NCBI RefSeq assembly: GCF_004010195.1
Contig: NC_057726.1
Span: forward strand, 70,596,532 to 70,642,057
Length of the DNA: 45,526 nucleotides
DNA from: Chiloscyllium plagiosum
Lineage: Eukaryota
Direction of reading: 5' to 3'
A program made the translations under genes and the position numbers. The notes under the pieces are model-generated. The model made no database searches. It was given only the letters and a program-made list of their open reading frames with translations, and was not told where the DNA came from. This document shows positions 8,266 to 43,609 of this stretch, in pieces (position 1 is the stretch's first letter; each line of letters opens with the position of its first letter).

Positions 8266-8284
8266 CCCCAATTTTTTTCCCGCG

Positions 8285-8845: not shown

Positions 8846-8859
8846 TTAAAGATCAGCAA

Positions 8860-10095: not shown

Positions 10096-10149
10096 GAGAC
10101 TGATGACACTGCCAATCCGTGAGGCGGCCAGGTCTGTCAATCAAAAGTT

Positions 10150-13959: not shown

Positions 13960-14225
13960 AAATATAGAAAATAGGAGGAGAGATAGGCCATTCAGCCCCT
14001 CGAGCTTGCTCTACCATTCACTCTCTGATCATGGCTGATCAGTGAACTCAATTCCCTGTTCCCACCTTCTCCCTGTATCCATTGATCCCTTCAGTCCTGA
14101 TAACTATATCTAACAACTTCATGAAAATATCCAATGTTTTGACCTCAACTGCTTTCTGTGGAAGGGGATCACTGGCTCACCACTCTGGACGATGATGTTT
14201 CTCCTCATCTCTACCCTAACTGGCC
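13960..14225 (-). mobile_element. CR1 3' end fragment
   Basis: Reverse-orientation CR1 3' UTR (ggccattcagccc...atcatggctgatc). Confidence 0.65.
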
Positions 14226-14240
14226 TACTGGGAACAGGAG

Positions 14241-14276
14241 ATTCGACGTTTCGGGCACAGGCTCTTCTTCAGGAAT
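14241..14276 (-). ncRNA. Putative minimal type I hammerhead ribozyme in the Penelope pLTR
   Basis: - strand reads auuc-CUGAAGA-a-gagc-cugu-gccc-GAAAC-GUC-gaau: 4-bp stem I, stem II with one mismatch, palindromic ACGU in place of helix III. Confidence 0.65.
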
Positions 14277-15308
14277 GAGCAGAGAGTGTTCAGCAGGAGA
14301 AGATAAAAGGTAGGGAGGAGGGACTTGGAGGAGGGGCGTTGGAAATGTGATAGGTGGAAAGAGGTCAAGGTGTGGGTGTTGGGTCGGAGTAGGATGGAGG
14401 CGGAGAGGTCAGGAAGAAGACTGCAGGTCAGGAAGGCGTTGCCGGGCTGGAGGGATTCGGCTGAGACAAGGTGGGGGGAGGGGGGATGAAGAAACTGGTG
14501 AAGTCCAAGTTCATCCCCTGTGGTTGGAGGGTTCCCAGTCGGAAGATAAGACGCTCCTCCTCCGACCGTCGGGTTGTTGTGGTTTGGCGGTGGATGAGTC
14601 CAATGACCTGCATATCCTCGGTGGAGTGGGAGGGGGAGTTGAGATGCTGTGCTACAGGTTGGTTGGGTTGGTTCGTCCGGGTGGCCCAGAGGTGCTCTCT
14701 GAATCGCTCCGCAAGTAGGCGGCCTGTCTCCCCAATATAGAGGAGGCCACACCGGCTGCAGCGGATGCAGTAGATGATGTGGGTGGAGGTGCAGGTGAAT
14801 CTGTGGCGGATATGGAATTTTCCTTTGGGGCCTTGGAGAGAAGTGAGGGGGGAGGTGTGGGCGCAAGTGTTGCACCTCCTGCGGTTGCAAGGGAAGGTGC
14901 CGGGAGTGGTGGTTGGGTCGGTGGGGGGTGTGGATCTGACAAGGGAGTCGCGGAGGGAGTGGTCTCTATGGAAAGCTGATAGGGGAGGGGAGGGAAATAT
15001 ATTCTTGGTGCTGGGGTCTGTTTGGAGGTGGCGGAAGTGACGGCGGATGATGTGCTGTACATGGAGATTGGTGGGGTGGTAGGTGAGGACCAGTGGGGTT
15101 CTGTCCTGGTGGCGGTTGGAGGGGCGGGGCTCAAGGGCGGGGGGGCGGGAAGTGGAGGAGATGCGGTGGAGGGCACCGTCGACCACGTCGGGGGGGAAAT
15201 TGCGGGTCCTTGAAGAAGGAGGCGTCTGTGTTGTACGTATTTTGAACTGGTCCTCCTGGGAGCAGATGCGGCGGAGACGAAGGAATTGGGAGAATGGGAT
15301 GGCGTTTT

Positions 15309-15442
15309 TACAGGGGGCAGGATGGGAGGAGGTGTAGTCCAGGTAGCTGTGGGAGTCTGTTGGTTTGTAGTAGAATACAGGGGGCAGGATGGGAGGAGGT
15401 GTAGTCCAGGTAGCTGTGGGAGTCGGTTGGTTTGTAGTAGAA
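15309..15442 (+). repeat. 67-bp tandem duplication at the truncated end of the Penelope element
   Basis: 15309-15375 is repeated at 15376-15442 with one mismatch. Confidence 0.9.
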
Positions 15443-15699
15443 TTTTAGTTTTTATGTCTTATATTCTTATGTCTTCTTGTCCAGTATGATGTATTTGATG
15501 CCACTCACTAGAATAGCCTTCTCACAGTTTGTGATTAATTTCCAAATAAGTCAATTCCCACATTGACCAAACATTCTTTCTAATTAATTTTCTGCACAGA
15601 CGTACTCGGGTGGGGCGCAGCAATTCACGGATAGAGAAAGCCAGCAGGCACAGATGCACTTAAATATCTTGAACAAAACGGAAATGACCGAGGTGACAA

Positions 15700-18959: not shown

Positions 18960-21740
18960 TGTACAAGAAGCATCTCCAGCTGCAGCTCCTGGAAGCCCGA
19001 TTTTTGGAGTTAGAGTGCCAAATGGGGATCCTGCGGAGCATCCACAAAATGAAAAGTGTTGTGGATGCAAGTCTAGAGATGTGGTTACACAGCAGACTCA
19101 GATTCAACAGGCAGGAAGGGAATGGGTGACCACCAGGCAGAGCAGGAAGGCTAAGGAGGCAGTGCAGGAATCTTCTGAGGCTATTCCCTTACAAAACAGA
19201 TATGCCCTTTCAGCTGGTGTTGAGGGGAATGGCTTCTCAGGGGATAACAGCGCAGCCAAATTCATTGCATCAGAGGGAGGGAGGGTTAGGTGTGGAAATG
19301 CTATAAGTGTAGGGGTTTCAATCGTCAGGGGAATAGATAGGCATTTCTGTGGCGACAAATAAGAGTCCAGGTTAGTATGTTGTCTCTCTGGTGCTAGGGT
19401 CCTGGATGTCTCACAGCGAATGCAAGATCTTCTGGAGCGGGAGGGTGAACAGCCAGTGGTCATGGTACATATTGGCACTAACGACACAGTTAATAAGTTC
19501 CTAAAAGCAGAATGTAGAGAAGTAGAAAGTATGTTGAAATGTAACACCTTAAGGGTAGTTATCTCTGGATTAATACCAGTACTAGTAAGAGTAGAAACGG
19601 CACGATGTAGAGGAATAGCATGTGACAGAAAAAAACATAAGAGGGGAAGGGTTTGAAATTTGTGGTATCTGTACAAACTGGATGGATTACATCTGTGTCG
19701 AGAGTATGGTGCTGAAAAAGCACAACAGGAGATGGCTGAAAGAGGGACAGGACTGGCAGCTGAATTTCCCAAGATTTAGCTATTTCAGTCGTGACAGAAA
19801 GGGATCTAAAAGTGGGTGGGGAAGCACAGCAGGAGATGGCTGAAAGAGGGACAGGACTGGCAGCTGAATTTCCCAAGATTTTGCTATTTCAGTCGTGACA
19901 GAAAGGGATCTAAAAGTGGGTGGGGAAGTTACATTGCTGGCAAATGATCATCTTACCGCAGTACTGAGGGAAGATACATCAGAGAACCCATGGAGTCAGG
20001 CAATATGGGTAGAACTCAGGAATAGGAAAACTGAAATCACAATACTGGTGGTATAGTACAGAGTTCAGAACAGCCAGTGGGAGATAGAGGAGACAATATG
20101 TTAAAAGATTTTGGAAAGACGTAAAAACAGCAGGGTTGTTGATATGGACGATTTTAACTTCTTCTGTGTTGACTGGGAATCACTATATGCTCGGGGCTTG
20201 GATGGGGCGGAATTTGCAACGTCCATTGAGGAGGTATTCTTGACACATTATGACAACAGTCCAGCCAGGGAAGGGGTTATATTTGACCTGGTTTTGCAAA
20301 ATGAACCTGGCCAGTCTTGTGAATCTATAGTGAGGGAGCATTTTGGCAGTAGTGATCTTAATATCATGAGTTTTAAGACACTCATGGAGAGGGATAACAG
20401 CAGTCCTTGGATGAAAGTGTTAAAGTCAGTGAACTACAACAATATTAGGCAAGAACTAGAGAATTTTGATTGTGGGCAGCTGTTTTAAAGTAAATCTTCA
20501 TCAGACATGTGGAGCACTTCAAATTGCAGTTGACAAGAGTTTCGTGAGCGGCACATTTCTATGAGGATGAAGGATAGCTACCGCAAATTATATGAACCTT
20601 GGATGAGCAAGGGTGTTATGACCTTGGCCAGAAAGGAAAAGGAAGCATAGGAGGTCAATTGGAACTGATGAAGCCCTTGAAGTATTTAAGAAAAGTAGGG
20701 AAGAATTTCAACAAGGCTTGAGAGGAAAATGTAGCTGGTCTAACTAGTAAGTTTGCAGATGATACAAACATTGGTGGAGTATTTAAGAAAAGTAGGGAAG
20801 AATTTCAACAAGGCTTTAGAGGAAAATGTAGCTGGTCTAACTAGTAAGTTTGCAGATGATACAAACATTGGTGGAGTTGTGTATAATGAGGAGCATTGTC
20901 CGAGGATACAACAGAATATGATCAGTTGGAGGCATGGGCGGAAAAGTGGCAGATGAAGTTTAATTGGGACTCATGTGAGATCGAGTACAGGTAGAAATTT
21001 TACAGTGAATGGCAGGGCCCTTAGGAGCATTGATACGCAGAGAGGTCTGGGTGTGTAGACCCACAGATCACTGAAGGTGAGAGCGCAGCCAGGTAAGGTA
21101 CTTAAGTTAGTAAAAAGGGCTTATGGCATGCTTGACTTCATTGGAAGGGGCATTGAGGATAAGGATAGACAAGTTATGCTGCAACTTAATAGAACTTTAG
21201 TGTGGCCACACTTGGAATATTGCATATAGTTCTGGTCACCACGAAATCAGAAGGGCGTGGATGTTTTGGAGAAGGTACAGAAAAGGTTTACCAAGATGTT
21301 GCCTGGTGTGGGGGATTTTAGCTGTGAAGAAAGGTTGGAAAGACTGGGTTTGTTTTCACTCAAACACAGGAATTTCAGGGGCGATCTAATAGAAGTTTAT
21401 CAGATTGTGAATGACATGGATAGAGTAGAAAGTAAGATGTTTTCCCAGGGTGGAGGAATCAAGTACGAGGGGACACAGGTTCATGGTTTGAGGAAGCAAA
21501 TTCAAAAGTGAATGTCCAAGTCAGTTGGGGATGGTGAGTGCCTGGAACGTGTTGCCAGAGGAGGTGATGGAAGCAGATGGAATAGCAGCATTCAAAAATG
21601 ACCTGGATGAATACATGGATAGAGGGATACCGTTCCTGTAAGTGAAGGCAGTTTTAGTATGGAAGGGCAAAATGTTGCATCACAGGCTGGCAGAGACAAA
21701 CTGTCTGTTCCTGTGCTGTATACTTCCGTGTTCTTCTGTA
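18960..21740 (+). mobile_element. Degenerate CR1 LINE (ORF1 esterase, endonuclease and RT pieces, internal deletions)
   Basis: IPLQNRY, SIVRGIDR, HIGTND, DLVLQNEPG, SKFADDT, RGDLIEVY; two ~100-bp tandem duplications. Confidence 0.88.
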
Positions 21741-22005
21741 TCCGAGTTATCTGAGCCCCTCAGAGATCATCCTGCCTGCTACAACGCAGCAGCTTTGGCC
21801 ATGATGAATCACCAGTCTCAGTGTAGACCTGACTTGATAGGTTATGAGACCTGACTCGGTTAGATGGCAATTTGCAAATTGAAAGGAAAAATAAAATTGC
21901 CCAACTAAGTCGCTGAGAGATTTTATCTTTAATGTGAATACTACCTCTTACCTGACATTGGTTAATCATTGCTAACATTTCACTTATTCTCCCCCCTGTT
22001 TTTAG

Positions 22006-22112
22006 TGAACAGTGACAGGAAAAGGAATTCTTGGCGAGATGTGCTGTAGCAGGGTTATTATTTCTCCTGTTGGTAATGTTTGCGATACATTGCAAATTAT
22101 TTCAAACTAAAG
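22006..22112 (+). pseudogene. Transmembrane exon copy 1 (EKEFLARCAVAGLLFLLLVMFAIHCKLFQTK), frameshifted relative to copy 2
   Basis: Branch site gctaac, acceptor cccccctgtttttag, donor AAAG|gtaaga; 107 nt versus 114 nt, so a phase-1 reading gives xNSDRKRNSWRDVL*. Confidence 0.7.
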
Positions 22113-22479
22113 GTAAGACTTGAAACAATCTGTGTTCAGAATTCCATTTGAATGTTTAATTGGTCATGCCTGGGCCGCAGGTTTTCATTTGCTGTGTGTT
22201 GGGAGCATAATGATAGATGGAGCTAAAACCTTATCTCACCCACATTAAGAAACCAAGACCTATAAATAGAGAGGTGGGACATACCTCTTCCTCTAATCTC
22301 TTCCTCAGGCTAACTTCTCTCTGCTTGAAAATATAGTTCAACCACATTTCATTCTTAATATAATGGAAGGCAGTGATCTGAACCCAGTAAATTGCAATCA
22401 GCAAATTCTGAATTAGAAAATGATCTCATTTCCATTTAACAACAGAAGGCAATGCAACTTTTGTCACTTATGAGAATGA

Positions 22480-23300: not shown

Positions 23301-23779
23301 ACCAGGTTCATTTATGATCATATTATCGTTTTATTATCATAACACTTGATTAACACAATGCCAAATGGTGTTTGTGATGATGTTGATCATTGATAATAAC
23401 GTTGTTCACAAGTCGACACCGAGATAACTCCAGTCAACTCCAGAGATAACAGCCAGTTCAAGGAACAGCTTCATTTCCCAATCACTTTTGTATTTTAAGA
23501 AATTGCAAGTTTTTGCAGTGTACAACATACCTGCATCATTATTTTCTGATCATCCTGAATAACAAAGCACCTCCCATCATGGGTTCCCAATGTTGCCTTT
23601 GCCCTAAACGTATGGTTCATGATCACTTATTTCCGCAATCATACTCACGCGTACCCAATCCAGTAGTTTCTGTGACAGTTTACGTTGTGTCACTGTAGAC
23701 TGGATAGTTATTCAAGTGTGCGAAGAGGCATAACCACACTCAAAGTGTAACATAAACTGTTTGGCATATTCATACTTTC

Positions 23780-27661: not shown

Positions 27662-29480
27662 TGTGAATGAAGAAACTGTGAAGATAATGTTAGCTGCTGC
27701 ATTTCCTCTCTTATTCCTTCCTTGCCAAAATGGGTATCAGTGTGAAGACAGTCACACATTTCCCTACACTAAATTGTGTTTACCTTTTTCAACATTCTCA
27801 GTTGCCTTGAAGTCTGTTACTCTGTTCACTAGTTATGAAATTATCAAGTTTTATAAAATCCATAAGCTTCTAAATTGAACTGCTTGAATAATTCAATCAA
27901 TTATAAACAACAATCAATGGTCAGAACGGGGACCCCATTCAGGTTATTCAAAAATTATTTTCCTTTGACAAATTAATACTTGACTAGTGTGAAAACTGTC
28001 AGGAAAATTGTTTCGAAATCTGGAACAGCAAGAAAACAACAAAATATTTCCTGTGCTTTAGCCATTGAAGAGGCAGTTTCAGTTCAGATTTAATCTCAAA
28101 TAAATGTGGGAAACAAATGCAGAATATATTAAAATATGTTGTCCAAATGAAACTTCCCAAATAAAACAATTGGGATTACAATGGTTACAGACCAGTAACT
28201 GTACAACTTTGCTCGAGATCAATATTCTTTGAATTTGCCATATGAAGTGGGGGGGGGGGGGGAGGGAAATTAAGTTTTAACAATAATTGACAGAACTTAA
28301 GCAGCCCAGCCTCAAGTTCTAATATTCTCTACAATCTTATTTCCTAACAAGCCATATTGTGCGACAGACTTTTCGAATCTGCATATTTAGATAATAAGTA
28401 CCTTCATCAAACCCCTCACATAATTTATAAAAGAGTCCAATTAAGTTAATGAAGTCTGAGCTGTTCTTAATAATCAGTGCTTAGTTTCATTCACCAGCAT
28501 TTATTTCCAACCTTCTGAAGTGCCACATGTGTTAAAGTGTTTAATGATTCTCATTCTGAAATAGACTGACTGGCTTTTAGTCACTGGACTGAAACCTATC
28601 ACCTAGCATATTATTTGGCTGTCATACAAAAGATAGTGCTGTGATGAGGAACGGAATTGAAATCCAGGTTATCCACACAGTGGTATCAGGTCCTGTGAGA
28701 TATATTTGATGCCACTCACTAGAATACTTTTCTCACAGCCTGCGATTAAACTCCATGCAATTTAATTCCACAGTGAGCAAACATTCTTTCTAATCAGTTT
28801 ACTTTTCTGCACAGCAAGTACAGAAGTGATGGAGAACAAATAGAGTAATTCACTTGCATGTCTGGAACAACAAGAAATAGACGGGGAGATAATGCCACAG
28901 TGGGAATCTGAAAGGGTTCAGATCCCACCATGATAGTTTTCAGAATTTAAACTATGTACTTAAAACATATAAAATTGAATGTCTGTACTGATTAATGGTT
29001 ACCATGAAACTACTACTGATTGTCATAAAATGAATATGCTTCTCAAATGGCATTGAGGGAAAGAAATCAATCATCCTTCTCTGGTCTGGCCTACATTTAC
29101 TCGAGCCCAACAGCGTGTAGTTGACTCCTATCTGCTTTCAAGTGATGCTAAGAATATGTAACAAATTCTGTGCCTAGTGACAACATCAACCCATGAGCAA
29201 CTGAAACAAGAATAAACTGCATGATTAAAATGTGTCAATTAATAGGATTAAAGATGTACTAACACAAATATACCATATGAGTATTCTTAATTCCTTATAA
29301 GAGTTTACTTACTTAAAGCCACCACAATAATGTTACAAATTATTGGAAAGATGGAATTTCCTGAGTAAGTCCCTGGGAGATGGTTGCTTTAATATATGTG
29401 CTACATCTTACCTGAAGGTAATTATCACTGCAATCTCTGCTCTTTAAGATGCTAACATTTGATTTGTTCTCCCATTTTAG

Positions 29481-29594
29481 CTAGCACTGTCAGCACGTTT
29501 CCAAAGGAGTTGGTGGCTCGATATGCTGTTGCAGGATTATTACTTTTAATGCTAGTAACAGTTGTGAATTGTTGCAAATTAGATACAATTAAAG
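29481..29594 (+). CDS. Intact transmembrane exon of an Ig-superfamily receptor (xSTVSTFPKELVARYAVAGLLLLMLVTVVNCCKLDTIKG)
   Basis: Branch site gctaac, acceptor ttctcccattttag, donor AAAG|gtcaga; 114 nt, phase 1-1, open; hydrophobic helix with an N-proximal Arg; conserved with the paralog at 22006. Confidence 0.8.
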
Positions 29595-29746
29595 GTCAGA
29601 CGTGACACAATGTATCTTTAGAATTGCACTTTGGTATTTACTCACAGCTCAGTGCTGCAGTGTCAGGAAAATTAACTGGTCACGTCTGCGGTGTAGGTTT
29701 TCACTTGCTACTGTTTTGGGAGCATCATCCCTCTGAAACCCAGTGT

Positions 29747-30058
29747 TTAGATTACTTACAGTGTGGAAACAGGCCTTCAGCCCAACAAGTCCACACCGAC
29801 CCACCGCAGAGCAACCCACCCAGACCCATTCCCCTACATTTACGCTTTCCCCTAGCACTATAGGTAATTTAGCATTGCTGATTCACCTAACCTGCACATC
29901 TTTGGACTAGGGGAGAAAACCAGTTCACCCGGAGAAAACCCATGCAGACCTGGGGAGAATGCGCAAACTTCACACAGACAGGTTCCTATGGCAGGAATTG
30001 AACCTGGGTATCTGGCGCTATGAGGCAGCAACGCTAACCACTGTGCCACTGTACCGCC
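29747..30058 (-). mobile_element. HE1-like SINE
   Basis: Same family as 18610 and 31006; absent from duplicate copy 1. Confidence 0.88.
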
Positions 30059-31005
30059 TATTCTAATTATAAAAAGAGCTAAAATCGAGTCTACACCTCA
30101 GGCTAATTTCTCTAGAAATGAAAATAAAGGTGAGCCCCCCATTACATTCTATGATAATGCAAGACAGTGATCTGAACCCAGTAAATTACAATGGGAAAAT
30201 TCTGACATAGAAAATAAACTTATTCTCATTCAACAATAGAAATAAATGCAACTTTGTCACTTATGATGAGAATGACCGTGTTGCTTGATTACAGCATTAC
30301 TTTTGACTGAAGTGATGCCAAATTATGTTGATGATGAAATTGATCATTGATGAAAATGTTGTTTTCTAACAGGCACCAAGATAACTCCAGTAGACTCCAG
30401 AGATAACAACCAGTTTGAGGAACAGGTTTGTTTCATGATCACTTTTGTTTTGCCAAGTAGAACGTTTCGACAGTGTGCAACATGCATACATCATTATTTC
30501 CTGAACTGCTGCAACATCACAACATTTCCCACTAAGACCATGGATTCCCAATGTTGTCTTTGCCCTAAACACATGACTAATGATCACTCATTTCAACAAT
30601 GATCCCCACACATACCTAACCCAGTAGCTTCTGCAAACAGTTGATGTTTTCATTGTGTCACTGGATAGTTATTCAACTGTGCAAAGTGGCATATGCTCAC
30701 ACAAAGCATAACAGATATTCAGCAGGGCAAGTAAAATCTATGCAGAGAAACAGTTAATGCATCAGGTCTAAGGCGTTGAATCATTGTGCAACAATTCTGT
30801 TGCTCACAATGAACTTGTACAGTAGCTTTACGCTGAGTGGTTGCGACCATTATTCAAATTCAGCCCCAATGTGTTATGACGAATTGTGCAAACTGGGCCC
30901 TTAGTTTATTGTTTAACGCCACAAGTCTAGTCTTAGACAAATTAATTGTGAATATTCACAGAAATGGTTATTCTCCTTTGTCCTGTTTTGAGAAATGATT
31001 TTTTT

Positions 31006-31304
31006 TTAGATTACTTTACAGTGTGGAAACAGGCCCTTCGGCCCAACAGGTCCACACCGAACCGCCAAAGCGCACCCACCCAGACCCATTCCTCTACATC
31101 TAACACTACAGGCAATTTAACTTGGCCAATTCACCTGACCTGCACATTTTTGGACTGTGGGAGGAAACCGGAGCACCCGGAGGAAACCCACGCAGACACG
31201 GGGAGAATGTGCAAACTCCACACAGTCAGTGACCTGAGGCAGGAGTTGAACCCGGGTCTCTGGCGCTGTGAGGCAGCAGTGCTAACCACTGTGCCACCGT
31301 GCCA
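31006..31304 (-). mobile_element. HE1-like SINE, well preserved
   Basis: Head ggcacggtggcacagtggttagcactgctgcctcacagcgccag, B-box ggttcaactcc, and V-domain core. Confidence 0.92.
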
Positions 31305-31468
31305 CCCATAATTTGAAAATTACATTAATGACTGCATGTTCTGAAATGGACTTTTCAGTTTTAGGTCATGAGTTTTGAAATGTGGATACGTTGTGCCATC
31401 TAGCTGGAGCGAGTTTGATGCACTTTAGTTTACTGCACTCAAACAGTAGCTTGCTCTTATCTCCCAAG

Positions 31469-31494
31469 GTCAAAGTCGACAGCAACGAGAATGA
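31469..31494 (+). CDS. Candidate short cytoplasmic tail exon (GQSRQQRE*)
   Basis: Acceptor ttgctcttatctcccaag; phase 1 matches the TM exon; AATAAA at 31631-31636. Confidence 0.45.
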
Positions 31495-31788
31495 GCATTG
31501 ATAATTGAACTTTAAACTTGAAATGGAGCCAGCAAGTCTAGAGAAAGGATCACAAAACTTCACTGTTAAATATAACATCAATTGAGCAGTAGGATAGGAG
31601 GTCATTTAGGAAAAACAATTATGAGAAGCAAATAAACAGGCTTGAAAGGAAAGTAAGAAAAGCTGACATGCTCAAGAAAATCAATGGTTTAGTAGTGTCT
31701 GTGGAGAGAGAATTAGAGTTAACTTTCACGTTTGATATGAAACTTGTTGAGAAATGAAAAGGGCTGTAAAATGGTCACTTGTGCTGTT

Positions 31789-31913
31789 AAAATCACACAA
31801 CACCAGGTCATAGTCCAATTTCGACTTCCAAATAAACCTGTTGGACTATTACCCTGGTGTTGTGTGATTTTTGACTTTGTCCACCCCAGTCCAACACCGG
31901 CACCTCTTCATCA
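31789..31913. mobile_element. Penelope family-2 pLTR remnant with inverted partial copy (hairpin)
   Basis: aaaatcacacaacaccagg...cctggtgttgtgtgatttt inverted repeat; same sequence as the terminus at 38985. Confidence 0.8.
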
Positions 31914-32689
31914 CTTTTGCTGTGACAGTTGGCAGAGAAACCAGTGGAAAAGTTAGCAATGGTGCCAAACGCAAAAGGCACAAGTTGTGTGAATGGTGGT
32001 AAAGGTGCAGGAAAGTTGTAACATCTCTAACTGAGATTTGTGAAATGGGAAGTAGAGTGTGCCTGCAGTGTGAACAGCAAGGCAAACAAAATACGAAAAG
32101 GTGTCAGTGCAGTTATCACGGTTAAAATCATAGTGGATGGCAGAGGTCATGTCCTCATATCTCTCAGGACACAAGAGAGTTAAAATAAGCATAAACGTCC
32201 ATTTGAAAAGATGTGATGTGGTATTCCAAAGAAAGTCTGTTGATTGTGAATGTACTTTTCTTCATACTTATGTGTGTGCATATCTAATTTTTCGAAGGGC
32301 TGATGTTTGCCAACTTATACATTGATTATGTTAAAATATATCAGAAGACACATGTTACAATGAGATAGTTTTGCTAGTTTATCAACTCCAGGCGTGTGAG
32401 ATGGTGCAAATGGGGTGAAGAAAGGCATTTCATAAATGCCCTGTTCTATTGCTGGGAAAGACGACTATGTTCCTTTAATGATCGGAAATTGATCTGAGTT
32501 GTAGTTTAAACTGGCAATACGCTGACTAAAATGTTAGTGCCATTAATAATAATACTATAATCCCATGGGCAATGTTGTGTTTTCCTTTAATCCTTTGATA
32601 ACCTACTATGTATTGTTGGCAATGCTTGGTTCTGCATTATACTTTACAACTTAAGACTCAGATGGTGTTTCTATAATATTCGTCCTCAG

Positions 32690-32800
32690 AGAATACAAGA
32701 AGGAGAGGTGGGGATTCTATCTTATGCTGCACTAAATGTCAGACACTACAAGAGAAGTAGAAAGAACAGACAGAAGGAAGACCGAACTTTGTATGCACAG
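32690..32800 (+). pseudogene. Cytoplasmic ITIM exon A (RIQEGEVGILSYAALNVRHYKRSRKNRQKEDRTLYAQ); donor appears inactivated
   Basis: Acceptor tttctataatattcgtcctcag; 111 nt, phase 0-0; LSYAAL ITIM; ends CAG|gaacaa instead of gt. Confidence 0.7.
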
Positions 32801-32940
32801 GAACAATTATAAAACACAACTGTGCTTTCTAATTAGGACCGCTTCAACACAAGTGCCGATTTCCATTGATGTATATTGAATAGCTACAAGAATTAATTTG
32901 ACTAGCAGCTGCTCTTGATGTTTCCTTATTGCTTTTACAG

Positions 32941-33072
32941 ATTAAACAAGGAACTGATGATAATCTGATTTATGTGTATCTGGAAATGACTGATTTTCCA
33001 AAAACAACAACAAAGAAAGAGACAACAAACATGAAGATAAGCAAGCCAAACAGAGAATCCAGGATTGCATAG
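32941..33072 (+). pseudogene. Cytoplasmic terminal exon B (IKQGTDDNLIYVYLEMTDFPK...SRIA*)
   Basis: Strong acceptor tttccttattgcttttacag; phase 0; its first Ile completes TLYAQI (ITSM); LIYVYL ITIM; AATAAA at 33259-33264. Confidence 0.7.
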
Positions 33073-34339
33073 CAAATTGTCCAATTTTCTCTGGGTCCAG
33101 CTGTCTTCATGAACAGATATTATATCTACCTGATTGAATTCGGCTTATTATAAACCACATTATTGTTTATCAGAAAGGAGGCAAAGAATCAAAAATGCAA
33201 ATGCAGCAATACGTTCATTTCTGTGTTTTTGTACTCTTTGGAAAACCAATGTCTGTAAAATAAAGGAATCTGTTTATTAATTATCATTAGTTAAGAAAAG
33301 TATCAAAGACAATGGATGTCCCTTTTGAATCCAGTTAGTAGTTGATAATGTTAAAGAACTGGATCATCTATCCGAATCTACCCAAGGAATTAGCAGCCTT
33401 GTGTTGAGCCTTGGACACAGAAGAATCAGACAACTTGGCTCAACTGCTCCCTTCTATCTTCTCAGCTACACTGAATTTCCACTCAACCCTGATCAATCTG
33501 AATCCACCAGTCTATCCATCTATCCATTTGTACATCATGCATCTATCAAACTTCGTTGTTAGTTTCTGTATGTTCATCACAGTTAAAAACCCTTCTGGCA
33601 GAAAATTCTATACACTAAACATTTGCTATGTAAAGAGCTTCTTCATAATTTATTGAGAGACTTACAAATAATAAAAATATAGTTCTGGACTATTGTTCTT
33701 ATCTCACTCAGAAGTCAAAATATCATTTCCACACCTTCCTTTAAGTCATTTTCATCATGGTGGAAAAAAAACTGTCTGGTCAACATTAGCTTTAAAACAG
33801 AATTTATACAGGTACACAACTATACCATTAAAAAAGATAATATCAAGAATATTCGACCCAATTGACTTTTCCAGAATACATATTACTCAATGTTTTTAAT
33901 TGCAAAAATATATCTATCATTTTCTTGCCTGTTCTCTATGGTAGTATTTTCGAAAAGAGCTGAGGAGAGAAATTAAAGTATATACCAGACATTGAATGAA
34001 GTATATTTCTTTTGATCTCGGTCTGAATTTACTATTTAGTTCCCTCAGCTAATGGCAATTTTCAATTAATATCTACTAGTCAAGCAATTTAAACATATTA
34101 TGTTTCAATTAGACCAGCAGATGTTGTTTCTAACTTGAAGCAAAATGGGCCTCTTTGTTGACGTTCACCATGTTGGATTGTCATTTGATGCCAGGAGTCG
34201 ATATAATGAAGTCCACTGCACTTTCTCCACAATAACTACATTGTTCCTTCTGTAAGAGTATCAGCTATCTGTGCATCAAAATCAAAGGTTACAGTTGATG
34301 CAAGAAAAGTGAGGAGCCAAACAAAAACATAAATCCTCA

Positions 34340-36860: not shown

Positions 36861-36989
36861 TGAAAGATTCGATTGATTAGAATGCAAATTCAGTGCCTAT
36901 TTCAATCATAGCCCCAAGTTAATTAAAGGTTGTATCAGTGTTTGCCTAACTTGCCAAACATCAATCAGGTAGAGATACAAAACATGAAA

Positions 36990-38980
36990 GGCCGACGAGG
37001 GTAGTGGCTATTTTGGATTTGATGCTCGGCAATGAGCCGAGACAGGTGTCAGATCTTGCGGTGGGAGAGCATTTTGGTGATAGTGACCACAACTGCCTCA
37101 CATTCGACATAGTAATGGAGAAGGAGAGAAATAGGCATAATGGGAGGATATTTAATTGGGGAAAAGAAACTGTGATGCTCTCAGACGTGAGTTGGGAAGC
37201 ATGAACGGGAGCAATTGTTCCATGGAAAGGGCAATATAGACATGTGGATAGTGTTTAAGGAACAGTTGATGTGAGTGATGCATAAATGTGTTCCTCTGAG
37301 ACAGGCAAGGAAGGGTAAGATAAAGGAACCTTGGATGACGAGACCAGAGGAGCTTCTCGTCAAAAGAAAGAAGGCAGCTTACGTAAGGTGGAGGAAGCAA
37401 GGGTCTTGCTGAACTCTAGAGGATTACAGGCAAGTGAGGAAGGAGCTAAAAATGGTCTGAGGAGAGCAAGAAGGGGGCACGAAAAAGGCTTGGCAGGAAG
37501 GATTAGGGAGAATCCAAAAGTATTTTACACGTATGTGAGGCGTAAGAGAATGATCAAAGAAAGATTAGGGCCGATCAGGGATAGAATAGAGAACTTGCTT
37601 ATAGAGTCTGAGGAGGTAGGGGAAGCCCTAAATGAGTTTTTTGCTACTGTCTTTACTAAAGAAAAGGACCTTGTAGAGGGAGGCAAATGTAATTCCTCTC
37701 TTCAAGAAAGGAAATAGAGAAATCCCCGGAAATTACAGACCAGTCAGTCTCACGTCTGTCCTCTGCAAGGTGTTAGGAAGGATTCTGAGGGATAGGATTT
37801 ATGACCATCTGGAAGAGCATGGATTGATTAAATGCAGTCAGCACAGCTTTGTGAGGGGGAGGTCATGCCTCACAAATCTTATTGATTTCTTTGAGGATGT
37901 TACTAGACAAGTTGATGAGGGTTGAGCGGTGGATGTGGTGTGTATGGACTTCAGCAAGACTTTTGATAAGGTTCCCCATTGTAGGCTCATTCAGAAGGTC
38001 AGAAAGAATGGGATACAGGAAAATTTAGCTGTCTGGATACAGAATTGGCTAGTCGATAGAAGACAGCGAGTGGTAGTGGAAGGAAAATATTCTGCCTGGA
38101 AGTCAGTGGTGAGTGGTGCTCCACAGGGCTCTGTTCTTGGGCCTGTACTCTTAATAATTTTTATTAATGACTTGGATGAGGGATTGAAAGATGGGTTAGC
38201 AAGTTTGAAGATGACACAAAGGTGGGAGGTGTCATTGACAGTATAGAGGACTGTTGTAGGCTTCAGCGTGACACTGACAGTATGCAGAGATGGGCTGAGA
38301 GGTGGCAGATGGAATTCAACCTGGATAAATGCGAGGTGATGCATTTTGTAAGGTCGAACTTGAAAGTTGACCACATGTTTAAAGATAGGGACACTGACAG
38401 TATGCAGAGATGGGCTGAGAGGTGGCAGATGGAATTCAACCTGGATAAATGCGAGGTTATGCATTTTGTAAGGTCGAACTTGAAAGTTGACCACATGTTT
38501 AAAGATAGGATTCTTAGCAGTGTGGAGGAACAGCGGGATCTAGATGTGCAGGTACATAGATATTCTATTTTGATCAAAAACACACAATTTGTAATCAGTC
38601 AGTGTTTGTAATCAGTCAGCATATATATTTTAAGATGCCTTAAAATTGCCACCCAAGTGGACAGGGTTGTTCAGAAGGCATATGGTGTTGTGGCTTTCAT
38701 TAACAGGGGGATTGAGTTTAAGAGCCGTGAGATCTTGTTGCAGCTCTATAAAACTTTGGTTAGACCGCACTTGGAAACTGTGTCCAGTTCTGGTCGCCCT
38801 ATTATAGGAAAGATGTGGATTCTTTGGAGAGGATTCGGAGGAGGTTTACCAGGATGCCGCCTAGATTGGAGTGCTTATCATACGAAGATTGGTTGACTGA
38901 GCTCAGACTTTATTTTTTGGAAAAAATAAGGAAGAGAGGGGACCTAACTGAGGTGTACAAGATAATGAGAAGCGTAGATA
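36990..38980 (+). mobile_element. CR1/HER1 LINE ORF2, degenerate, with a 120-bp tandem duplication (38270-38509)
   Basis: [50 protein letters not shown] twice, RGDLTEVYK. Confidence 0.92.
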
Positions 38981-38982
38981 AC

Positions 38983-40385
38983 GTTAAAAATCACACAACA
39001 CCAGGTTAAAGTCCAACAGGTTTAATTGGAAGCGCACTAGCTTTCGGAGCGACGCTCCATCATCAGGAGATTGTGGAGGGCTCGATCGTAACACAGAATT
39101 TATAGCAAAAATTTGCAGTGTGATGTAACTGAAATTATACATTGAAAAATTGATTGTCTGTTAAGCTATTCATCTGTTAGAATACAGTGATAGTTTCACT
39201 TCTTTCATGTGTAAATCACAAAAGTCTTTTTTTTAAAGTTGCATTCCCGGGTTAGCTGTTAACAATGGTGATAGCTGGACAATATGTTAAAGGTGTTAGC
39301 CCCCTGCGTTCTCTGTCTATGACCTGATGTTTAGGTTGATTCTAATCTAAAAAGTGAGATAACAGAGTTTTACATAAATTCATGCAGTTTTTGAGCTCAG
39401 AGTTCTACATGAATGTATGCAGTTTTTGAGCAAAGTGCAATGTAACTCTGCAAGTACAAATTCACGACACAAAATATATGTGTGCATGTGGGTCTTTGTC
39501 TGTCTGGGGTGGGGCTTGTGAGTGTGAGAAAGTGTGCGTAGTGAGTACAGAGTGTCTTAAGTCTGTGAGGGGGTGCATGTGTGGGAGTGTGTGTGTCTAT
39601 AAGGGTGTGTGTGGGTGTGTGTGTGCGCGTCTGTGTGTAGCTGTGTCCGTGTGTATGTGAGAGTGTGTGTGTAGGAATATCTGTCTGTGTGTGTGTAGTG
39701 CAATGGTGATCACCTGTAATGTGACATGAATCCAAGGTCCCGGTTGAGGCCTTCCCTATGGGTACCGAACTTAGCTATCAGCCTCTGCTCGGCCACTTTC
39801 CTCTGCTGCCTGTCCCAAAGTCCACCTTGGAGGATGGTCACCCAAAGGTCCGAGGCTGAATTTCCTGGACCACTGAAGAGTTCCCCAACTGGGAGTGAAC
39901 CGTCCTGTCTGTTGATTGCTGTGCGGTGACCATTCATCCGTTGTCGTAGCCTTTGCTCGGTTTCCCCAATGTACCATGCCTTTGGGCATCCTTGCCTGCA
40001 ACGTATAAGATAGACAACATTGGCTGAGTCACATGAGTACCTGCCATGTACAAGGTGGGAGGTGTTCCCACCTTGTACATGGTATCTATGTCCACAATCT
40101 GGCACGTCTTGCAGCGTCCACCGTGACAGGGTTGTATGGAGTTGTCCTGAGAGCCAGGCAGTTTGCTACGAACAATGATCTGTTTGAGGTTTGGCAGTTG
40201 TTTAAAGGCAAGTAGTGGAGGTGTGGGGAAGGTCTTGGTGAGGTGCTCATCCTCATTGATAATGTGTTGCAGGTCACGAAGAACATGGTGTAATTTTTCA
40301 GCCCCTGGGAAGTACTGAACAACGAAGGGTACCCTGTCAGTTGCAGCACGTGTCTGTCTCCTGAGGAGGTCATTATGGTTCCTTG
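38983..40385 (-). mobile_element. Penelope-like element family 2, 5'-truncated, with GIY-YIG, CA-rich UTR and pLTR
   Basis: RVPFVVQYFPG, CHGGRCKTC, NVVYLIRCRQGCPKAWYIGETEQ, RMNGHR, EGLNRDLGFMSHY. Confidence 0.92.
39035..39069 (-). ncRNA. Putative minimal hammerhead ribozyme
   Basis: - strand reads cuc-CUGAUGA-u-ggagc-guc-gcucc-GAAAG-CUA-gug: 5-bp stem II, palindromic AGCU, weak stem I. Confidence 0.65.
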
Positions 40386-41608
40386 CCCCCCCACCCCCCA
40401 TAAAAGGGTACTCAGGCTCATGGTCTATATCTCAATATATTGTGATCAAGTTTGATATGCATTTGTGTGCCATATCTCTAAATATAATTATATCGGAGAA
40501 TCTTTTAAATTTAATTAAATAACTTTGTGCCAATTACAGATAACGAATTATTCAAAAAATATCCTAAAGTTTGGAGAAATTAAAAAATTTTAAAGACAGT
40601 GACGATCAGTCACAACGAGCAGGACTCCATTCCCTTTAAGGGTCTAGGTAGTTTCTTGTACACAGGCCATGACTCTAAAGTGATACAAAAATATTAAGGT
40701 AAAATGATAAGGGAAAAAATCGATTGATCTTAATGAAAGGACTGGGATAATAAATAAAAGCTACATGTACACAGTCTGGCCCCTTCATTGCGTAATGAAT
40801 ACCTCCTGATGGCTATCCATTTCAAATATAGGAATGAAGTTAATTGCGAATTTTAAAAATAACCTATCATAAATTATGATCGTTAAGAATTTTGTAATCA
40901 AGTGCCCAGAACTGGGTTGCAGTGCTGAAATAGGCATTTACCAATAACAGGGTCATTAGGACCGATTTTTAAAAATTGATTTGACCCTGTTTGTCAAACA
41001 CGTATTTTTTTGTCACAGTCAGTGGTTGCAGGTGTTTAGTTTTCTGTACGTAATCACACAGTTTATCTTACATTCAGTTAGCTCACATTATTAGCATCCT
41101 AACATGCTCAGTCCAGCCTTGTCATTAGCTCTGTTTACTTCGCTCACACCGCCAAAGTAAACCTTATGCAACCTCCCAACTATAAACCGATTTTGGATCA
41201 CATCCAAATTTAACTAAAATCTTTTCAAAATTGATCCTCAGCAATTCTCAGATCTGCAAAGAGGCGTGTACCATGAGGGGTCATGCAGAAATCTTGAAGC
41301 AGTCACTGGAAGCTATGAAATGAGATGAGCCTGATAGTGATGTTTAATAGATCCAAAATGTAGCTGTTCTATCACTGATAACTCAGGCCAGGAGAAAGAA
41401 ATCAATAAACTCCGAAATTTATAGTCGGCATTCTATGTCATATCGCTAAATTTACTTTGCAACATGTTGTCAGATACCTAACCAAATTAAAAAAACGAAA
41501 GCAGAGTGGCGCTTTTCACTGTCATGTTTTAAACTGGTTCATATAGGTCACAAGGCGTCACACAAAAATAGGAACATGGAAACAGTATTAAAAGTTCACA
41601 TTTCTCAC

Positions 41609-41883
41609 CCTGAATTGTGTAGCTGACACTGGCTGGGAGCTGGAGGGTGTGTGGGAAATGCGGCACATACAAACCGATCCACTCCCCAGATGATTGAGAA
41701 TGCTGAAAACTTTAAATAAACTCCCTTCTTTCCATACGTTTGTGGCGTTGATCTCAGATGCAATTAGGATGTCAGTTTTATACCAAATGACGTGAATTTC
41801 CTCTGGGTAAAAAAGAGCTGTCGTGCAGCGGAGAGTGAGGGACGGAGCGGACAGACATGTAATCTTCATTGGCGTTGGTGGCA
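41609..41883 (-). pseudogene. Ig C1-set domain exon (SIRP/B7-H6-like), with a 1-nt frameshift near the 3' end
   Basis: Acceptor gtgttcacag (phase 1), donor CAGG|gtgaga; VPP..TLRCTTALFYPEEIHVIWYK..LFKVFSIL..CRISH has the C1-set C/FYP/W/CxxxH pattern; 275 nt is not divisible by 3. Confidence 0.85.
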
Positions 41884-43609
41884 CTGTGAACACATTGATG
41901 GGAATTGGTATTAAAGCGGTGTTAGTACATTACAGTGACAAAATAAATGAAAGAACGGACAACCCGAAGAATAATAATCAGGAAATAATAGGACTACTCA
42001 TTTAGTTTGGAAGCTATCGCTCCAGTAAGCACAGTAAGGCACCTAGGAGAACATCTGGTAAACATAAGACCGCTTCCACTCAGGAGGCCAAGCACAGCAG
42101 ATATATGGAAGGGGCACCATCTTCACATTCTCCTCCAGGCCACTCACCATCCTGACTTTGAAATGCCTGTATTGGGCCAACTGTTATTCTGAGCATCCAC
42201 CTACTGACGTTTTAATTTGTGCTGGTTGAATTGTAACTAATATTTTATTCACACAGTGCGAACTGCGATCACAATCACAATGCGTACTTAATGCAGAAAT
42301 ATAACTTATTCGCTTAGTCCATGTGGAGGGCCAATGGGATAGTTGGCACATTGTTTTCTATAGGCCAAACAGAATATGTCTGTTTTCATTCTGCTGACGT
42401 AATCATAAATTTGTGAGAATTAATTATGCATAATTTTTAATGACTCAATGGATTTGGATCGGCTCAGGCTTGGAGGGCCGAAGGGCCTGTTTTTGGGCTG
42501 CAAATGTTCTTTTTTCAGTGCAATGCCATTCCCTGGACAAGTTTGATGTTTATGGGAATGTAGAAATTGAGAGGCAATAAGTGCTCGCGACATCTGCATC
42601 CAATGACTGAACAAACGCAACTGAATATTTCCATTAGAAGGAAAGACTTGTGGAGGTTTAAAACATCGAACAGGCGCATTCTGATTAACTGAGCCTTAAA
42701 TTGGTTCCAGAACATAAACGGTGGCTTCCATCAAGTAGTGTTTGTATGAAGACAAGTGATAAAGAAGATCATTTCTACACTGAACTGATGTGTTTTAAAA
42801 ATATTACTCCTTGATAGTAAGTGCTTGTCGATTGCTGAACTGAGAATGAGGTGTTTCTGTTGTTAAAATTATCTAATTTCTCAACTCTTTATAATATTTT
42901 TCTATAATTAATGCCTTCTCATTGGCGCAAGGATATTTATGACTCTTTCTGTCGTTGTCCTTGAGAAGGTGGTGGGGTGGGGTGGGGGGGACTTCTTGAA
43001 CTGCTGTAATCCATTTGCCTAATCCCATTAAGGAGGGAATTGCTGGATTTTGACACAGTGATTCTAAGGGAACCGTGATAGACTGTAATCTGAATTTTCG
43101 AAGATCCTTGGCAACATTCTTGGTGTATGTCGTGAATTTCAGAGACTCTGTCCCAACATTAGGCTTTGTTGAAAAAAAAGTGTGAAATTAGTTTTGAACC
43201 TTTTCTCATCCTCTGACATCGCTGAAATGTGATCTCTGGGTGCTTGATGTGTTTCTTCGTTTCCTTTCAAGTTGCGTTTGAGACTGTTAAGACTGGAAAG
43301 CACATTTTCAGCTGCATTCCAAGGGGTTTTGCTCCTATCTCACATCATTTTCTGCGTCACTTTTTCGTTTGTATCAAGGTTTCTTCTAAATTAGTCTGGA
43401 CATAGTGCATCACCTTCTTTTGTAGTGCTTGACTAATCTATGTATTCCAACACAAAGCCTATTTTTCTAGCAGGTCTTTGAAAGACCTCATACAGCTTCT
43501 AGCAACCTCAACTTCGTGTTCTTTAATCAAAACTACACTAGATTGACAAATTGGCAGCTGGAATTTTTAAAAATTCATTCACGGATGTGGGTGTCGCTGA
43601 CTATGCTCA

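What the first reader, a model, noticed from the sequence alone, without database searches (positions are those of the whole stretch)
29481..33264. Shark SIRP-like receptor with an activating Arg-containing TM exon upstream of a decaying ITIM/ITSM tail: possible inhibitory-to-activating conversion
Seen: on one strand and in order, an intact phase-1 TM exon with Arg, a phase-compatible stop exon (GQSRQQRE*) with AATAAA, then two phase-0 exons that join to give LSYAAL...TLYAQ|I...LIYVYL, with the joining donor reading GA instead of GT. Known: SIRP-alpha tails have the same order of ITIM, TxYxxI, ITIM, and activating members of paired-receptor families (KIR, Ly49, SIRP-beta, Siglec) arise from inhibitory ones by gaining a charged TM residue and losing the tail. 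Inference: this locus is such a conversion with the old tail still readable, or a dual-signalling receptor. None of these exons appear in the ORF track.
Basis: partly seen in the sequence, partly recalled or inferred. Interest (0 to 1): 0.85.

Follow-up and report, generated by a model that had tools for sequence, protein, structure and literature searches.

The report
Shark SIRP-like receptor tail with arginine
This is the membrane-spanning and signalling end of a shark immune receptor gene, or a recently dead copy of one, that combines an "activating-type" arginine in the membrane helix with a mostly intact inhibitory tail.

Summary
The TM exon (29481-29594), the ITIM/ITSM exon (32690-32800) and the terminal exon (32941-33072) match a chondrichthyan V-C1-TM-tyrosine-tail family that NCBI names "SIRP-alpha-like/SIRP-beta-1-like".

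It carries phase 1 to phase 0, so the Arg-TM exon is still joined in frame to the whole tail. The proposed stop exon has a good acceptor but no homology support.

The Arg replaces a family-conserved Gly. The closest relatives, from epaulette shark and great white, have uncharged TMs.

Tail lesions are a GA donor at 32801-32802 and loss of the fourth tyrosine. The ITIM exon is a phase 0-0 cassette, so skipping it stays in frame. That gives the linker-to-terminal-exon tail seen in the epaulette shark model.

An older dead copy of TM plus linker lies upstream. No Ig exon lies on this strand in the window.

RNA and read checks were not possible, so function is unproven. Unchecked first-reader notes report similar cases elsewhere in this genome.

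Verdict: a new member of the known paired or bifunctional receptor kind, of moderate interest.

The parts
29481..29594 (+). TM exon B, phase 1 to 1. Arg (CGA) replaces the family-conserved Gly of the 'AGC' TM motif
30373..30425 (+). Linker (juxtamembrane) exon B, 53 nt, phase 1 to 0.
   Evidence: It is 87% identical to copy A against 65% for the flanks, Fisher p=0.0013. It matches the P0023 juxtamembrane window, with 32 of 5000 shuffles reaching the score
31469..31494 (+). A possible cryptic or alternative terminal exon, not corroborated
32690..32800 (+). ITIM/ITSM cassette exon, phase 0 to 0 (LSYAAL ... TLYAQ)
   Evidence: phmmer hit to P0001 at E 4.6e-7. Best match is Callorhinchus P0005..QEDRTVYAQ. 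Family profile E 9e-4
32801..32802 (+). GA where the donor GT is expected. Read-through adds EQL and then a stop
   Evidence: Not checked in raw reads
32941..33072 (+). Terminal coding exon (..NLIYVYLEM..KISKPNRESRIA, stop). The fourth tyrosine motif of relatives is replaced by ..ETTNM..
33259..33264 (+). AATAAA about 190 nt after the stop codon
22006..22112 (+). Decayed paralogous TM exon A. It has a 7-nt deletion, Arg kept as AGA, and Cys kept
23416..23468 (+). Decayed linker exon A. Both splice dinucleotides are lost
41609..41883 (-). Neighbouring C1-set exon of the same subfamily on the opposite strand, frameshifted near its 3' end
   Evidence: Pfam C1-set E 3e-5. 77% identity to P0012, with a second HSP in another frame

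Best explanation
Positions 29481-33264 (+) hold the 3' half of a gene, or a very recently inactivated gene. It belongs to a cartilaginous-fish multigene family of V(J)-C1-TM receptors with SIRP-alpha-style tyrosine tails.

The real exon chain is TM (29481-29594), linker (30373-30425), ITIM/ITSM cassette (32690-32800), terminal exon (32941-33072). All phases are compatible.

A family-conserved TM glycine has become arginine, about 4-5 residues into the helix from the outside. This is the position used by short-tailed, activating-type family members of other sharks. The tail has been kept open.

Inferred mechanism: the receptor would dock an acidic-TM ITAM adaptor through the Arg and still recruit SH2 phosphatases through its remaining ITIM(s). 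That would make it a bifunctional or intermediate member of a paired-receptor family.

The cassette exon's donor now reads GA. The most likely mRNA therefore skips that exon (linker to terminal exon, in frame), as in the epaulette-shark model P0012, leaving one ITIM (LIYVYL). The alternative is read-through to a stop after ..TLYAQEQL.

Shown: exon anatomy, family membership of the exons, derived state of the Arg, the lesions, and the old dead duplicate.

Inferred: expression, adaptor docking, exon skipping, and upstream Ig exons outside the window.
For: 1. Anatomy and phases.

2. Family assignment.
- phmmer of the ITIM exon found horn-shark P0001 (E 4.6e-7).
- The family was fetched (23 proteins at E<=1e-5).
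- A family profile ranks the ITIM-exon ORF (E 9e-4), TM-A (0.008), TM-B (0.33) and the terminal exon (0.45) directly after the minus-strand C1 exon, among 1509 ORF pieces and at the matching profile positions.
- 0 of 400 shuffles reach the observed scores for the TM, ITIM and terminal exons.

3. Same tail layout as P0023 (linker, ITIM exon, terminal exon) and P0012 (linker, terminal exon). The stop codon comes 3 residues after ..RES, as in P0012.

4. Linker exon.
- Its 53 nt convert phase 1 to phase 0 exactly.
- It is 87% identical to copy A against 65% for the flanks, p=0.0013.
- 32 of 5000 shuffles reach its score against the P0023 juxtamembrane window.

5. The Arg is derived and recurrent.
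- In the TM alignment it occupies the Gly column of 'AGC'.
- 7 of 19 chondrichthyan TM segments carry a core Arg, at three different columns.
- 11 of the 12 uncharged segments have at least one ITIM.
- Most Arg-bearing ones have short tails.
- Stegostoma P0006 (Arg TM, one ITIM left) pairs with the 79%-identical uncharged P0004.

6. Long maintenance.
- Copies A and B are 69-85% identical.
- A lost its frame and its splice sites.
- B keeps 134 codons open. The simulated chance of no stop is 3-6% at 0.15-0.2 substitutions per site, before counting indels and splice sites.
- B also keeps 7 of 8 splice dinucleotides.

7. Both copies encode Arg (CGA in B, AGA in A), and the linker has no stop. So an Arg-TM was already spliced to a longer tail before the two copies diverged.
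Against:
- The GA could not be checked in reads.
- No V or C1 exon lies on the + strand in the 29 kb upstream.
- The neighbours are dead: TM-A, linker-A and the frameshifted C1 exon on the other strand.
- No near-identical annotated protein was found for the ITIM exon (best 43% identity).
- TM-B alone is weak against the family profile (E 0.33).
- The linker is not significant against P0012 (3240 of 5000 shuffles) or against whole proteins (103 of 400).
- CGA and AGA are equally parsimonious with two independent Gly-to-Arg changes.
- The Arg might sit at the membrane interface rather than in the core.
- No shark adaptor was examined. A 2014 survey, of which I read passages, stated that the FcR common gamma chain appeared with bony fish (PMC4016189).
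Confidence: 0.5

Rival explanations
1. This is an orphaned pseudogene fragment. The TM and tail exons are the stranded 3' end of a family member whose Ig exons were lost or separated by rearrangement, for example an inversion relative to the minus-strand C1 exon. Nothing is expressed.
For: - No + strand Ig exon in the window.
- GA donor.
- Fourth tyrosine lost.
- Dead TM-A and linker-A upstream.
- Frameshifted C1 exon on the opposite strand. Its best relatives, P0012 and P0023, are also the best relatives of the + strand TM and tail.
- The region is dense with LINE and SINE.
- No annotated near-identical protein.
Against: - 134 codons are open and 7 of 8 splice dinucleotides are intact.
- The stop position is conserved, and there is a poly(A) signal.
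- The paralogous A copy decayed over the same interval.
- The ITIM exon still matches a holocephalan motif closely, KEDRTLYAQ against QEDRTVYAQ.
- C1 is 77% identical to P0012 but the terminal exon only about 38%, which argues against one inverted gene.
Confidence: 0.3
2. The gene now makes a short-tailed activating receptor by splicing the TM exon to the stop exon at 31469 and polyadenylating near 31631. The ITIM exons are unused relics.
For: - The acceptor at 31467-8 has a pyrimidine tract matched by only 2 of 188 AG sites in the interval, and it is the only one of these with a poly(A) hexamer within 400 nt of its stop.
- Short-tailed Arg-TM members exist in the family: P0014-P0018.
Against: - The stop-exon peptide has no homology: 91 of 400 shuffles do as well.
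- An in-frame stop soon after any AG is the rule, with a median of 41 nt.
- The conserved linker exon lies between the TM exon and this site and would have to be skipped.
- The tail exons remain open.
Confidence: 0.08
3. This is a plain inhibitory receptor. The Arg is a tolerated substitution near the outer membrane interface with no adaptor role, and the GA is an assembly or allelic variant.
For: - The hydrophobic run after the Arg (YAVAGLLLLMLVTVV..) is long enough to span a membrane on its own.
- Three of four tyrosine motifs are intact.
- The existence of a shark adaptor was not shown here.
Against: - Arg recurs in the TM core of 7 of 19 family TM segments, usually together with short tails.
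- It occupies the same column as in the short-tailed P0015-P0018.
- Both paralogous TM copies keep Arg through different codons.
Confidence: 0.12

Closest known systems
Annotated shark relatives: P0023 (Carcharodon, 'tyrosine-protein phosphatase non-receptor type substrate 1-like'), P0012 unit 2 (Hemiscyllium), and the Stegostoma pair P0004/P0006 ('SIRP beta-1-like')
   Same: - TM framework.
- Linker, ITIM and terminal-exon tail layout, and the ..KI.KP.RES ending.
- P0006 shows the same combination of a TM Arg with an eroded but ITIM-bearing tail.
   Different: - P0023 and P0012 unit 2 have Gly-Cys where this locus has Arg-Tyr.
- P0006 and P0012 unit 1 carry the Arg three residues after the Cys, not one before it.
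- Identity to this locus is only about 40% in the TM and tail.
- No Ig exons are seen for this locus.
Mammalian SIRP-alpha / SIRP-beta paired receptors
   Same: - V plus C1-type ectodomain in the relatives.
- Four-tyrosine tail order, seen here in the turtle SIRP-alpha-like P0025 (LTYADL, SEYACI, LTYADL, SEYASV).
- Pairing of inhibitory and charged-TM members.
   Different: - The shark relatives have one C1 domain, not two.
- SIRP-alpha (2wng) is only one of many equal PDB matches: E 4.4e-9, behind Fab heavy chains, CEA and B7-H6.
- SIRP-beta uses a TM lysine and DAP12 (recalled, not tested), whereas here there is an Arg near the outer end.
- CD47 binding is unknown.
Bifunctional Ig-like receptors with a TM arginine and an ITIM tail (KIR2DL4, chicken CHIR-AB1)
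   Same: - A positively charged TM residue combined with a cytoplasmic ITIM in one chain.
- PMC4016189 (passages read) notes the charged TM residue of CHIR-AB1 and Fc-alpha-RI and its role in docking FcR-gamma or DAP12.
- The ITIM of these receptors is recalled.
   Different: - No sequence relationship was shown. The TM exon has 0 PDB hits at E<=10.
- Those receptors have C2/I-set domains of the leukocyte receptor complex, not V-C1.
- Adaptor association is untested here.
NKp30 (NCR3)
   Same: - NCBI names some family members 'natural cytotoxicity triggering receptor 3-like'.
- The VJ-type V domain and TM Arg of NKp30 are recalled.
   Different: NKp30 has no C1 domain and no ITIM tail (recalled). 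Not tested.

Membership tests
Chondrichthyan V(J)-C1-TM-tyrosine-tail receptors (NCBI 'SIRP-alpha-like / SIRP-beta-1-like / NCR3-like') | TM exon matching the family TM | tested here: met
   Family profile: TM-A E 0.008 and TM-B E 0.33, at profile positions 227-263. TM-B against P0023 scores 52, reached by 0 of 400 shuffles. Column alignment.
Chondrichthyan V(J)-C1-TM-tyrosine-tail receptors (NCBI 'SIRP-alpha-like / SIRP-beta-1-like / NCR3-like') | Tail with ITIM, TxYAQ, ITIM, xEYxx[VI] in that order | tested here: met
   Three of four motifs are present in order (LSYAAL, TLYAQ|I, LIYVYL). The fourth is replaced by ETTNM. One exon has a GA donor.
Chondrichthyan V(J)-C1-TM-tyrosine-tail receptors (NCBI 'SIRP-alpha-like / SIRP-beta-1-like / NCR3-like') | V and C1 exons upstream on the same strand | tested here: not met
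   None lies in the 29 kb of + strand upstream. The only C1 exon is on the minus strand. Sequence before the window could not be seen.
SIRP family proper (SIRP-alpha/beta/gamma) | V domain followed by two C1 domains | tested here: not met
   The shark relatives have V plus a single C1 before the TM, for example P0003 with its TM at residue 233. This cannot be tested for the locus itself.
SIRP family proper (SIRP-alpha/beta/gamma) | Specific sequence affinity to SIRP-alpha over other V-C1 proteins | tested here: inconclusive
   P0003 against PDB: SIRP-alpha 2wng at E 4.4e-9, ranked below CT3, CEA, several Fab heavy chains, IgM and B7-H6.
SIRP family proper (SIRP-alpha/beta/gamma) | CD47 binding. 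Activating members have a TM Lys that docks DAP12 | not testable with these tools
   The TM residue here is Arg, not Lys. Ligand and adaptor are unknown.
Bifunctional Arg-TM plus ITIM receptors (KIR2DL4 / CHIR-AB1 type; a functional class, not a homology family) | Arg in the outer third of the TM helix and an ITIM in the tail of the same chain | tested here: met
   By sequence and exon phases only. The mRNA joining them was not observed.
Bifunctional Arg-TM plus ITIM receptors (KIR2DL4 / CHIR-AB1 type; a functional class, not a homology family) | Association with an ITAM adaptor through the Arg | not testable with these tools
   No shark adaptor was examined.

The most novel reading that the evidence does not exclude
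Sharks hold a large, so far undescribed V-C1 'SIRP-like' paired-receptor family in which a TM arginine has arisen repeatedly, at three or more helix positions.

This locus would represent a long-lived bifunctional state: an Arg-TM wired to an ITIM tail and maintained by selection since before an old exon-block duplication. The two paralogous TM exons may even have reached Arg independently (CGA against AGA, from a GGA glycine).

That would place both the paired-receptor design and its stable intermediate at the base of jawed vertebrates.
Probability: 0.25. Interest if true: 0.6.

Novelty: new member of a known kind. Interest (0 to 1): 0.42.

Why it matters
Paired inhibitory and activating receptors (KIR, Ly49, SIRP, LILR, Siglec) are a textbook case of host-pathogen arms-race evolution. 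Almost all of the evidence comes from mammals and birds.

A shark family showing the same Gly-to-Arg TM changes, with tails in several stages of erosion, would show two things:
- the design, and the route by which activating members arise, are as old as jawed vertebrates;
- there are natural intermediates in which to test whether Arg-TM and ITIM can act together.

This single locus adds one more case. Its value depends on expression data and on the upstream Ig exons.

Tried and rejected
1. RNA and read evidence. The look-up of sequencing runs listed 20 runs. None is on record as an RNA holder, and four DNA holders carry half or more of the words. So no junctions, no 3' ends and no check of the GA were obtained.

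2. The search for homologous proteins with the 73-aa ORF around the ITIM exon found no candidate. Because of the length filter this says nothing about longer relatives.

3. phmmer of the ITIM exon gave 2 hits. One, P0002, is a low-complexity false hit.

Exon boundaries and donors of relatives could not be compared.

5. Further decayed copies of the ITIM and terminal exons were sought in the window by tblastn. None scored better than E 0.5.

6. + strand V and C1 exons were sought three ways. The pattern scan gave 0 strict matches and 8 loose matches, none Ig-like. tblastn with the family proteins and the family profile also found none.

7. The TM exon was not more conserved than its flanks between copies A and B: 74 of 107 against 157 of 222, p=0.8.

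8. Pfam found nothing for the three + strand exon peptides. The PDB sequence search with the TM exon gave 0 hits.

9. Literature. Searches found no paper describing this shark family.
- I read the outline and passages of PMC12227049 (UrIg2, a different V plus many-C1 family), passages of PMC10751288, and passages of PMC4016189.
- 'Not described' therefore means 'not found by these six searches in this library'.

10. I considered that the + strand tail is the inverted 3' end of the minus-strand C1 gene. I rated this unlikely, given 77% against about 38% identity to P0012, but it is not excluded.

11. The exons were never joined into a spliced model for any search or fold. Each was searched apart.

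Full report
**What is in the sequence**

- A 114-nt exon at 29481-29594, bounded by AG and GT, phase 1 on both sides. It encodes STVSTFPKELVARYAVAGLLLLMLVTVVNCCKLDTIK.
- An AG at 31467-8, followed in the right phase by G-QSRQQRE-stop and, about 136 nt later, AATAAA.
- A 111-nt phase 0-0 exon at 32690-32800, RIQEGEVGILSYAALNVRHYKRSRKNRQKEDRTLYAQ. It is followed by GA instead of GT. Read-through adds EQL and a stop.
- A last exon from 32941, IKQGTDDNLIYVYLEMTDFPKTTTKKETTNMKISKPNRESRIA-stop. Its AATAAA is at 33259-64.

It has AG at 30371-2 and GT at 30426-7, and reads G-TKITPVDSRDNNQFEEQ. Its 53 nt convert phase 1 into phase 0. The TM exon is therefore connected in frame to both tail exons without any need for the 'stop exon'.

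Each exon was searched apart.

**Is it more than chance**

ITIM-like motifs alone are common, at 181 in 91,048 six-frame residues. The support comes from homology.
- phmmer of the ITIM exon against 1.84 billion representatives gave two hits. One is spurious (P0002). The other is P0001, a horn-shark V-TM protein with repeated LTYAAL...TVYAE modules.
- Searching with P0001, and then with an alignment of eight relatives, fetched the family. It gave 23 proteins at E<=1e-5, from Heterodontus, Stegostoma, Callorhinchus, Hemiscyllium, Heptranchias, Chiloscyllium, Scyliorhinus, Hemitrygon, Mobula, Rhincodon and Carcharodon, plus a turtle and teleosts.
- NCBI names these mostly 'tyrosine-protein phosphatase non-receptor type substrate 1-like' (that is, SIRP-alpha-like), 'signal-regulatory protein beta-1-like' or 'NCR3(-ligand)-like'.

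A profile of the 23 chondrichthyan members was searched against all 1509 ORF pieces of the window. The ranking was:
- the minus-strand C1 exon, E 4e-21;
- the ITIM-exon ORF, E 9e-4;
- the upstream TM copy, E 0.008;
- the TM exon of the finding, E 0.33;
- the terminal exon, E 0.45.

Each hit lies at the matching profile positions. In shuffling tests, 0 of 400 shuffles reach the observed best scores for the TM, ITIM and terminal exons. For the 7-residue stop-exon peptide, 91 of 400 do.

**The closest relatives and the tail layout**

The best matches of the TM exon are P0023 (great white) and P0012 (epaulette shark). The best match of the terminal exon is P0012. The best match of the ITIM exon is Callorhinchus P0005, with ..KHQEDRTVYAQ against ..RQKEDRTLYAQ here.

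P0023 reads TM..EGTEITENIPNQLEEQ, an ITIM-exon equivalent (..HGEVMGSPPYAALN..), and then a terminal part ..KLTYASLDF..AEYAGIKINKPNGES. P0012 unit 2 reads TM..EGTQITEDIPEQLETQ, and then directly TKQSADVKLIYTSVEF..KEYAKIKINKPHRESQLV-stop.

So the three-part tail of this locus is the tail of this subfamily. The stop codon falls three residues after RES, as in P0012. The linker-to-terminal-exon junction exists in an annotated relative.

The linker exon is short, and its homology is only moderately supported.
- 32 of 5000 shuffles reach its score against the P0023 juxtamembrane window.
- 3240 of 5000 do so against P0012.
- 103 of 400 do so against whole proteins.

It is independently supported by its exact phase bridging. 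It is also 87% identical to its upstream paralogue, against 65% in the flanks (Fisher p=0.0013).

**The arginine**

In an alignment of 19 chondrichthyan TM segments, the turtle protein and the two window copies, the family shows a conserved ..A-G-C-A-.-G.. motif. The finding has A-R-Y-A-V-A-G and the upstream copy has A-R-C-A-V-A-G. The Arg therefore replaces the conserved Gly, about 4-5 residues into the helix.
- P0012 unit 2 and P0023 are uncharged there.
- Seven of the 19 segments have a core Arg, at three different columns.
  - One before the Cys column: P0015-P0018, the same column as here.
  - Two after it: P0014.
  - Three after it: P0006 and P0012 unit 1.
- Eleven of the 12 uncharged segments have at least one ITIM.
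- The Arg-bearing segments mostly have tails of 4-48 residues without motifs.
- Exceptions are P0006 (one LTYAAL left, with the second motif spoiled) and P0017 (one ITIM-like VGYDAL).
- P0012 unit 1 is uninformative, because the model runs on into a second unit.
- P0006 is 79% identical to the uncharged, four-tyrosine P0004 from the same Stegostoma contig.

The family thus already contains annotated inhibitory, activating-type and intermediate members. The locus studied here is another intermediate.

**The upstream duplicate and what it implies**

Self-comparison and alignments show a second, older copy of the block.
- 15802-16261 matches 29014-29392.
- 21970-22149 holds a TM exon A (22006-22112).
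- 23358-23752 holds a linker exon A (23416-23468).
- Identities are 69-85%.
- TM-A has a 7-nt deletion that breaks the phase. Linker-A has lost both AG and GT.

Copy B has kept 134 codons open, 7 of 8 splice dinucleotides and its stop position. A simple substitution simulation gives a 3-6% chance of no stop at 0.15-0.2 substitutions per site. Indels and splice sites would lower this further. B was therefore under purifying selection for most of the time since the two copies diverged.

Both copies encode Arg, CGA in B and AGA in A. This fits either an Arg ancestor plus one synonymous change, or two independent changes from GGA. The two are equally parsimonious.

The linker exon has no stop and is present in both copies. 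An Arg-TM was therefore, most simply, already spliced to a longer cytoplasmic tail before the copies diverged. This favours a long-standing bifunctional design over a conversion caught in progress.

The TM exon itself is no more conserved than its flanks between A and B (p=0.8).

**The lesions**
- GA at 32801-2. No alternative in-frame GT exists before the stop at 32810-12.
- The fourth tyrosine motif of relatives (KEYAKI, AEYAGI) reads ETTNM here.

The ITIM exon is a symmetrical cassette. A dead donor therefore predicts in-frame skipping, giving a P0012-like tail with the single ITIM LIYVYL. The alternative is read-through to ..TLYAQEQL-stop, leaving LSYAAL. Neither outcome was observed.

**The stop exon**

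Its acceptor is as pyrimidine-rich as the real ones. Only 2 of 188 AG sites in the interval reach it, and it is the only one of these with a poly(A) hexamer within 400 nt. But an in-frame stop soon after an AG is the rule, with a median of 41 nt, and nothing in 23 relatives resembles it. It remains a possible cryptic terminal exon, no more.

**What is missing**
- No V or C1 exon lies on the + strand in the 29 kb upstream.
- The only Ig exon is a C1-set exon on the minus strand at 41609-41883 (Pfam E 3e-5). It is 77% identical to P0012 and frameshifted near its end.

Expression, the GA in reads and the exon boundaries of relatives are therefore all untested.

**Comparison with known systems**

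As a working design, this is a paired or bifunctional Ig-superfamily receptor. SIRP-alpha/beta is the family NCBI's names point to. KIR2DL4 and CHIR-AB1 are the closest functional analogues, with a TM Arg plus an ITIM in one chain. The charged TM residue of CHIR-AB1 is noted in PMC4016189, of which I read passages. The rest is recalled.

Membership in SIRP proper is not established.
- The shark relatives have one C1 domain, not two.
- SIRP-alpha is only one of many equal PDB matches.
- The charged residue is Arg, not Lys.
- CD47 binding is unknown.

UrIg and UrIg2 (PMC12227049, outline and passages read) are a different V plus many-C1 family.

Six literature searches found no description of this shark family. 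Supplements were closed.

**Earlier notes of this scan**

First-reader notes, all unchecked, report the same family at many places on this chromosome piece, and similar 'Arg TM plus disabled ITIM' cases. I tested the two that lie in this window, the TM-block duplication and the frameshifted C1 exon. Both hold.

**Verdict**

The exons are genuine family exons, the Arg is derived, and the tail is eroding. But the Arg-TM is still wired in frame to the tail through a missed exon, and the arrangement looks old. The thing is a new member of a known kind. Its functional status is open.

Noticed in passing
window 41609-41883 (-): A C1-set Ig exon, 77% identical to residues 351-428 of the Hemiscyllium model P0012. 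After ..ISH the match continues in another frame (..TLQLPASVSYTIQG), which indicates a one-base indel near 41650. No TM or tail exon for it lies on the minus strand of the window.
   Followed up: partly
window 42624-42743 (-): 40 codons, 55% identical to residues 11-50 of Stegostoma P0013 (E 7e-9), with an in-frame stop. It may be a dead 5' exon, or a repeat that was taken up into that gene model.
   Followed up: no
protein P0012 (Hemiscyllium ocellatum model, 546 aa): The annotated model looks like two adjacent V-C1-TM units fused. The first has a TM Arg (..VVGCALRALAIL..). The second is uncharged and has a tyrosine tail. It is named 'cell adhesion molecule-related/down-regulated by oncogenes-like', which does not fit.
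   Followed up: partly
window 22006-22112 and 29481-29594 (+): The two paralogous TM exons encode their Arg with different codons, AGA and CGA. Each is one step from a GGA glycine, so a single origin and a double origin are equally parsimonious.
   Followed up: partly
window 31789-31884 (+) and 38974-39032: A short palindromic element (..aaatcacacaacaccaggt.. and its complement) occurs twice in the window at 88-93% identity. It is probably a small mobile element.
   Followed up: no
window 5700-15500, 19100-21500, 36900-40400: Many LINE reverse-transcriptase and endonuclease ORF fragments lie on both strands. The longest is 300 aa, at 12017-12916 (+). High GC skew follows these blocks. A (CA)-rich stretch lies at about 39430-39700.
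   Followed up: no
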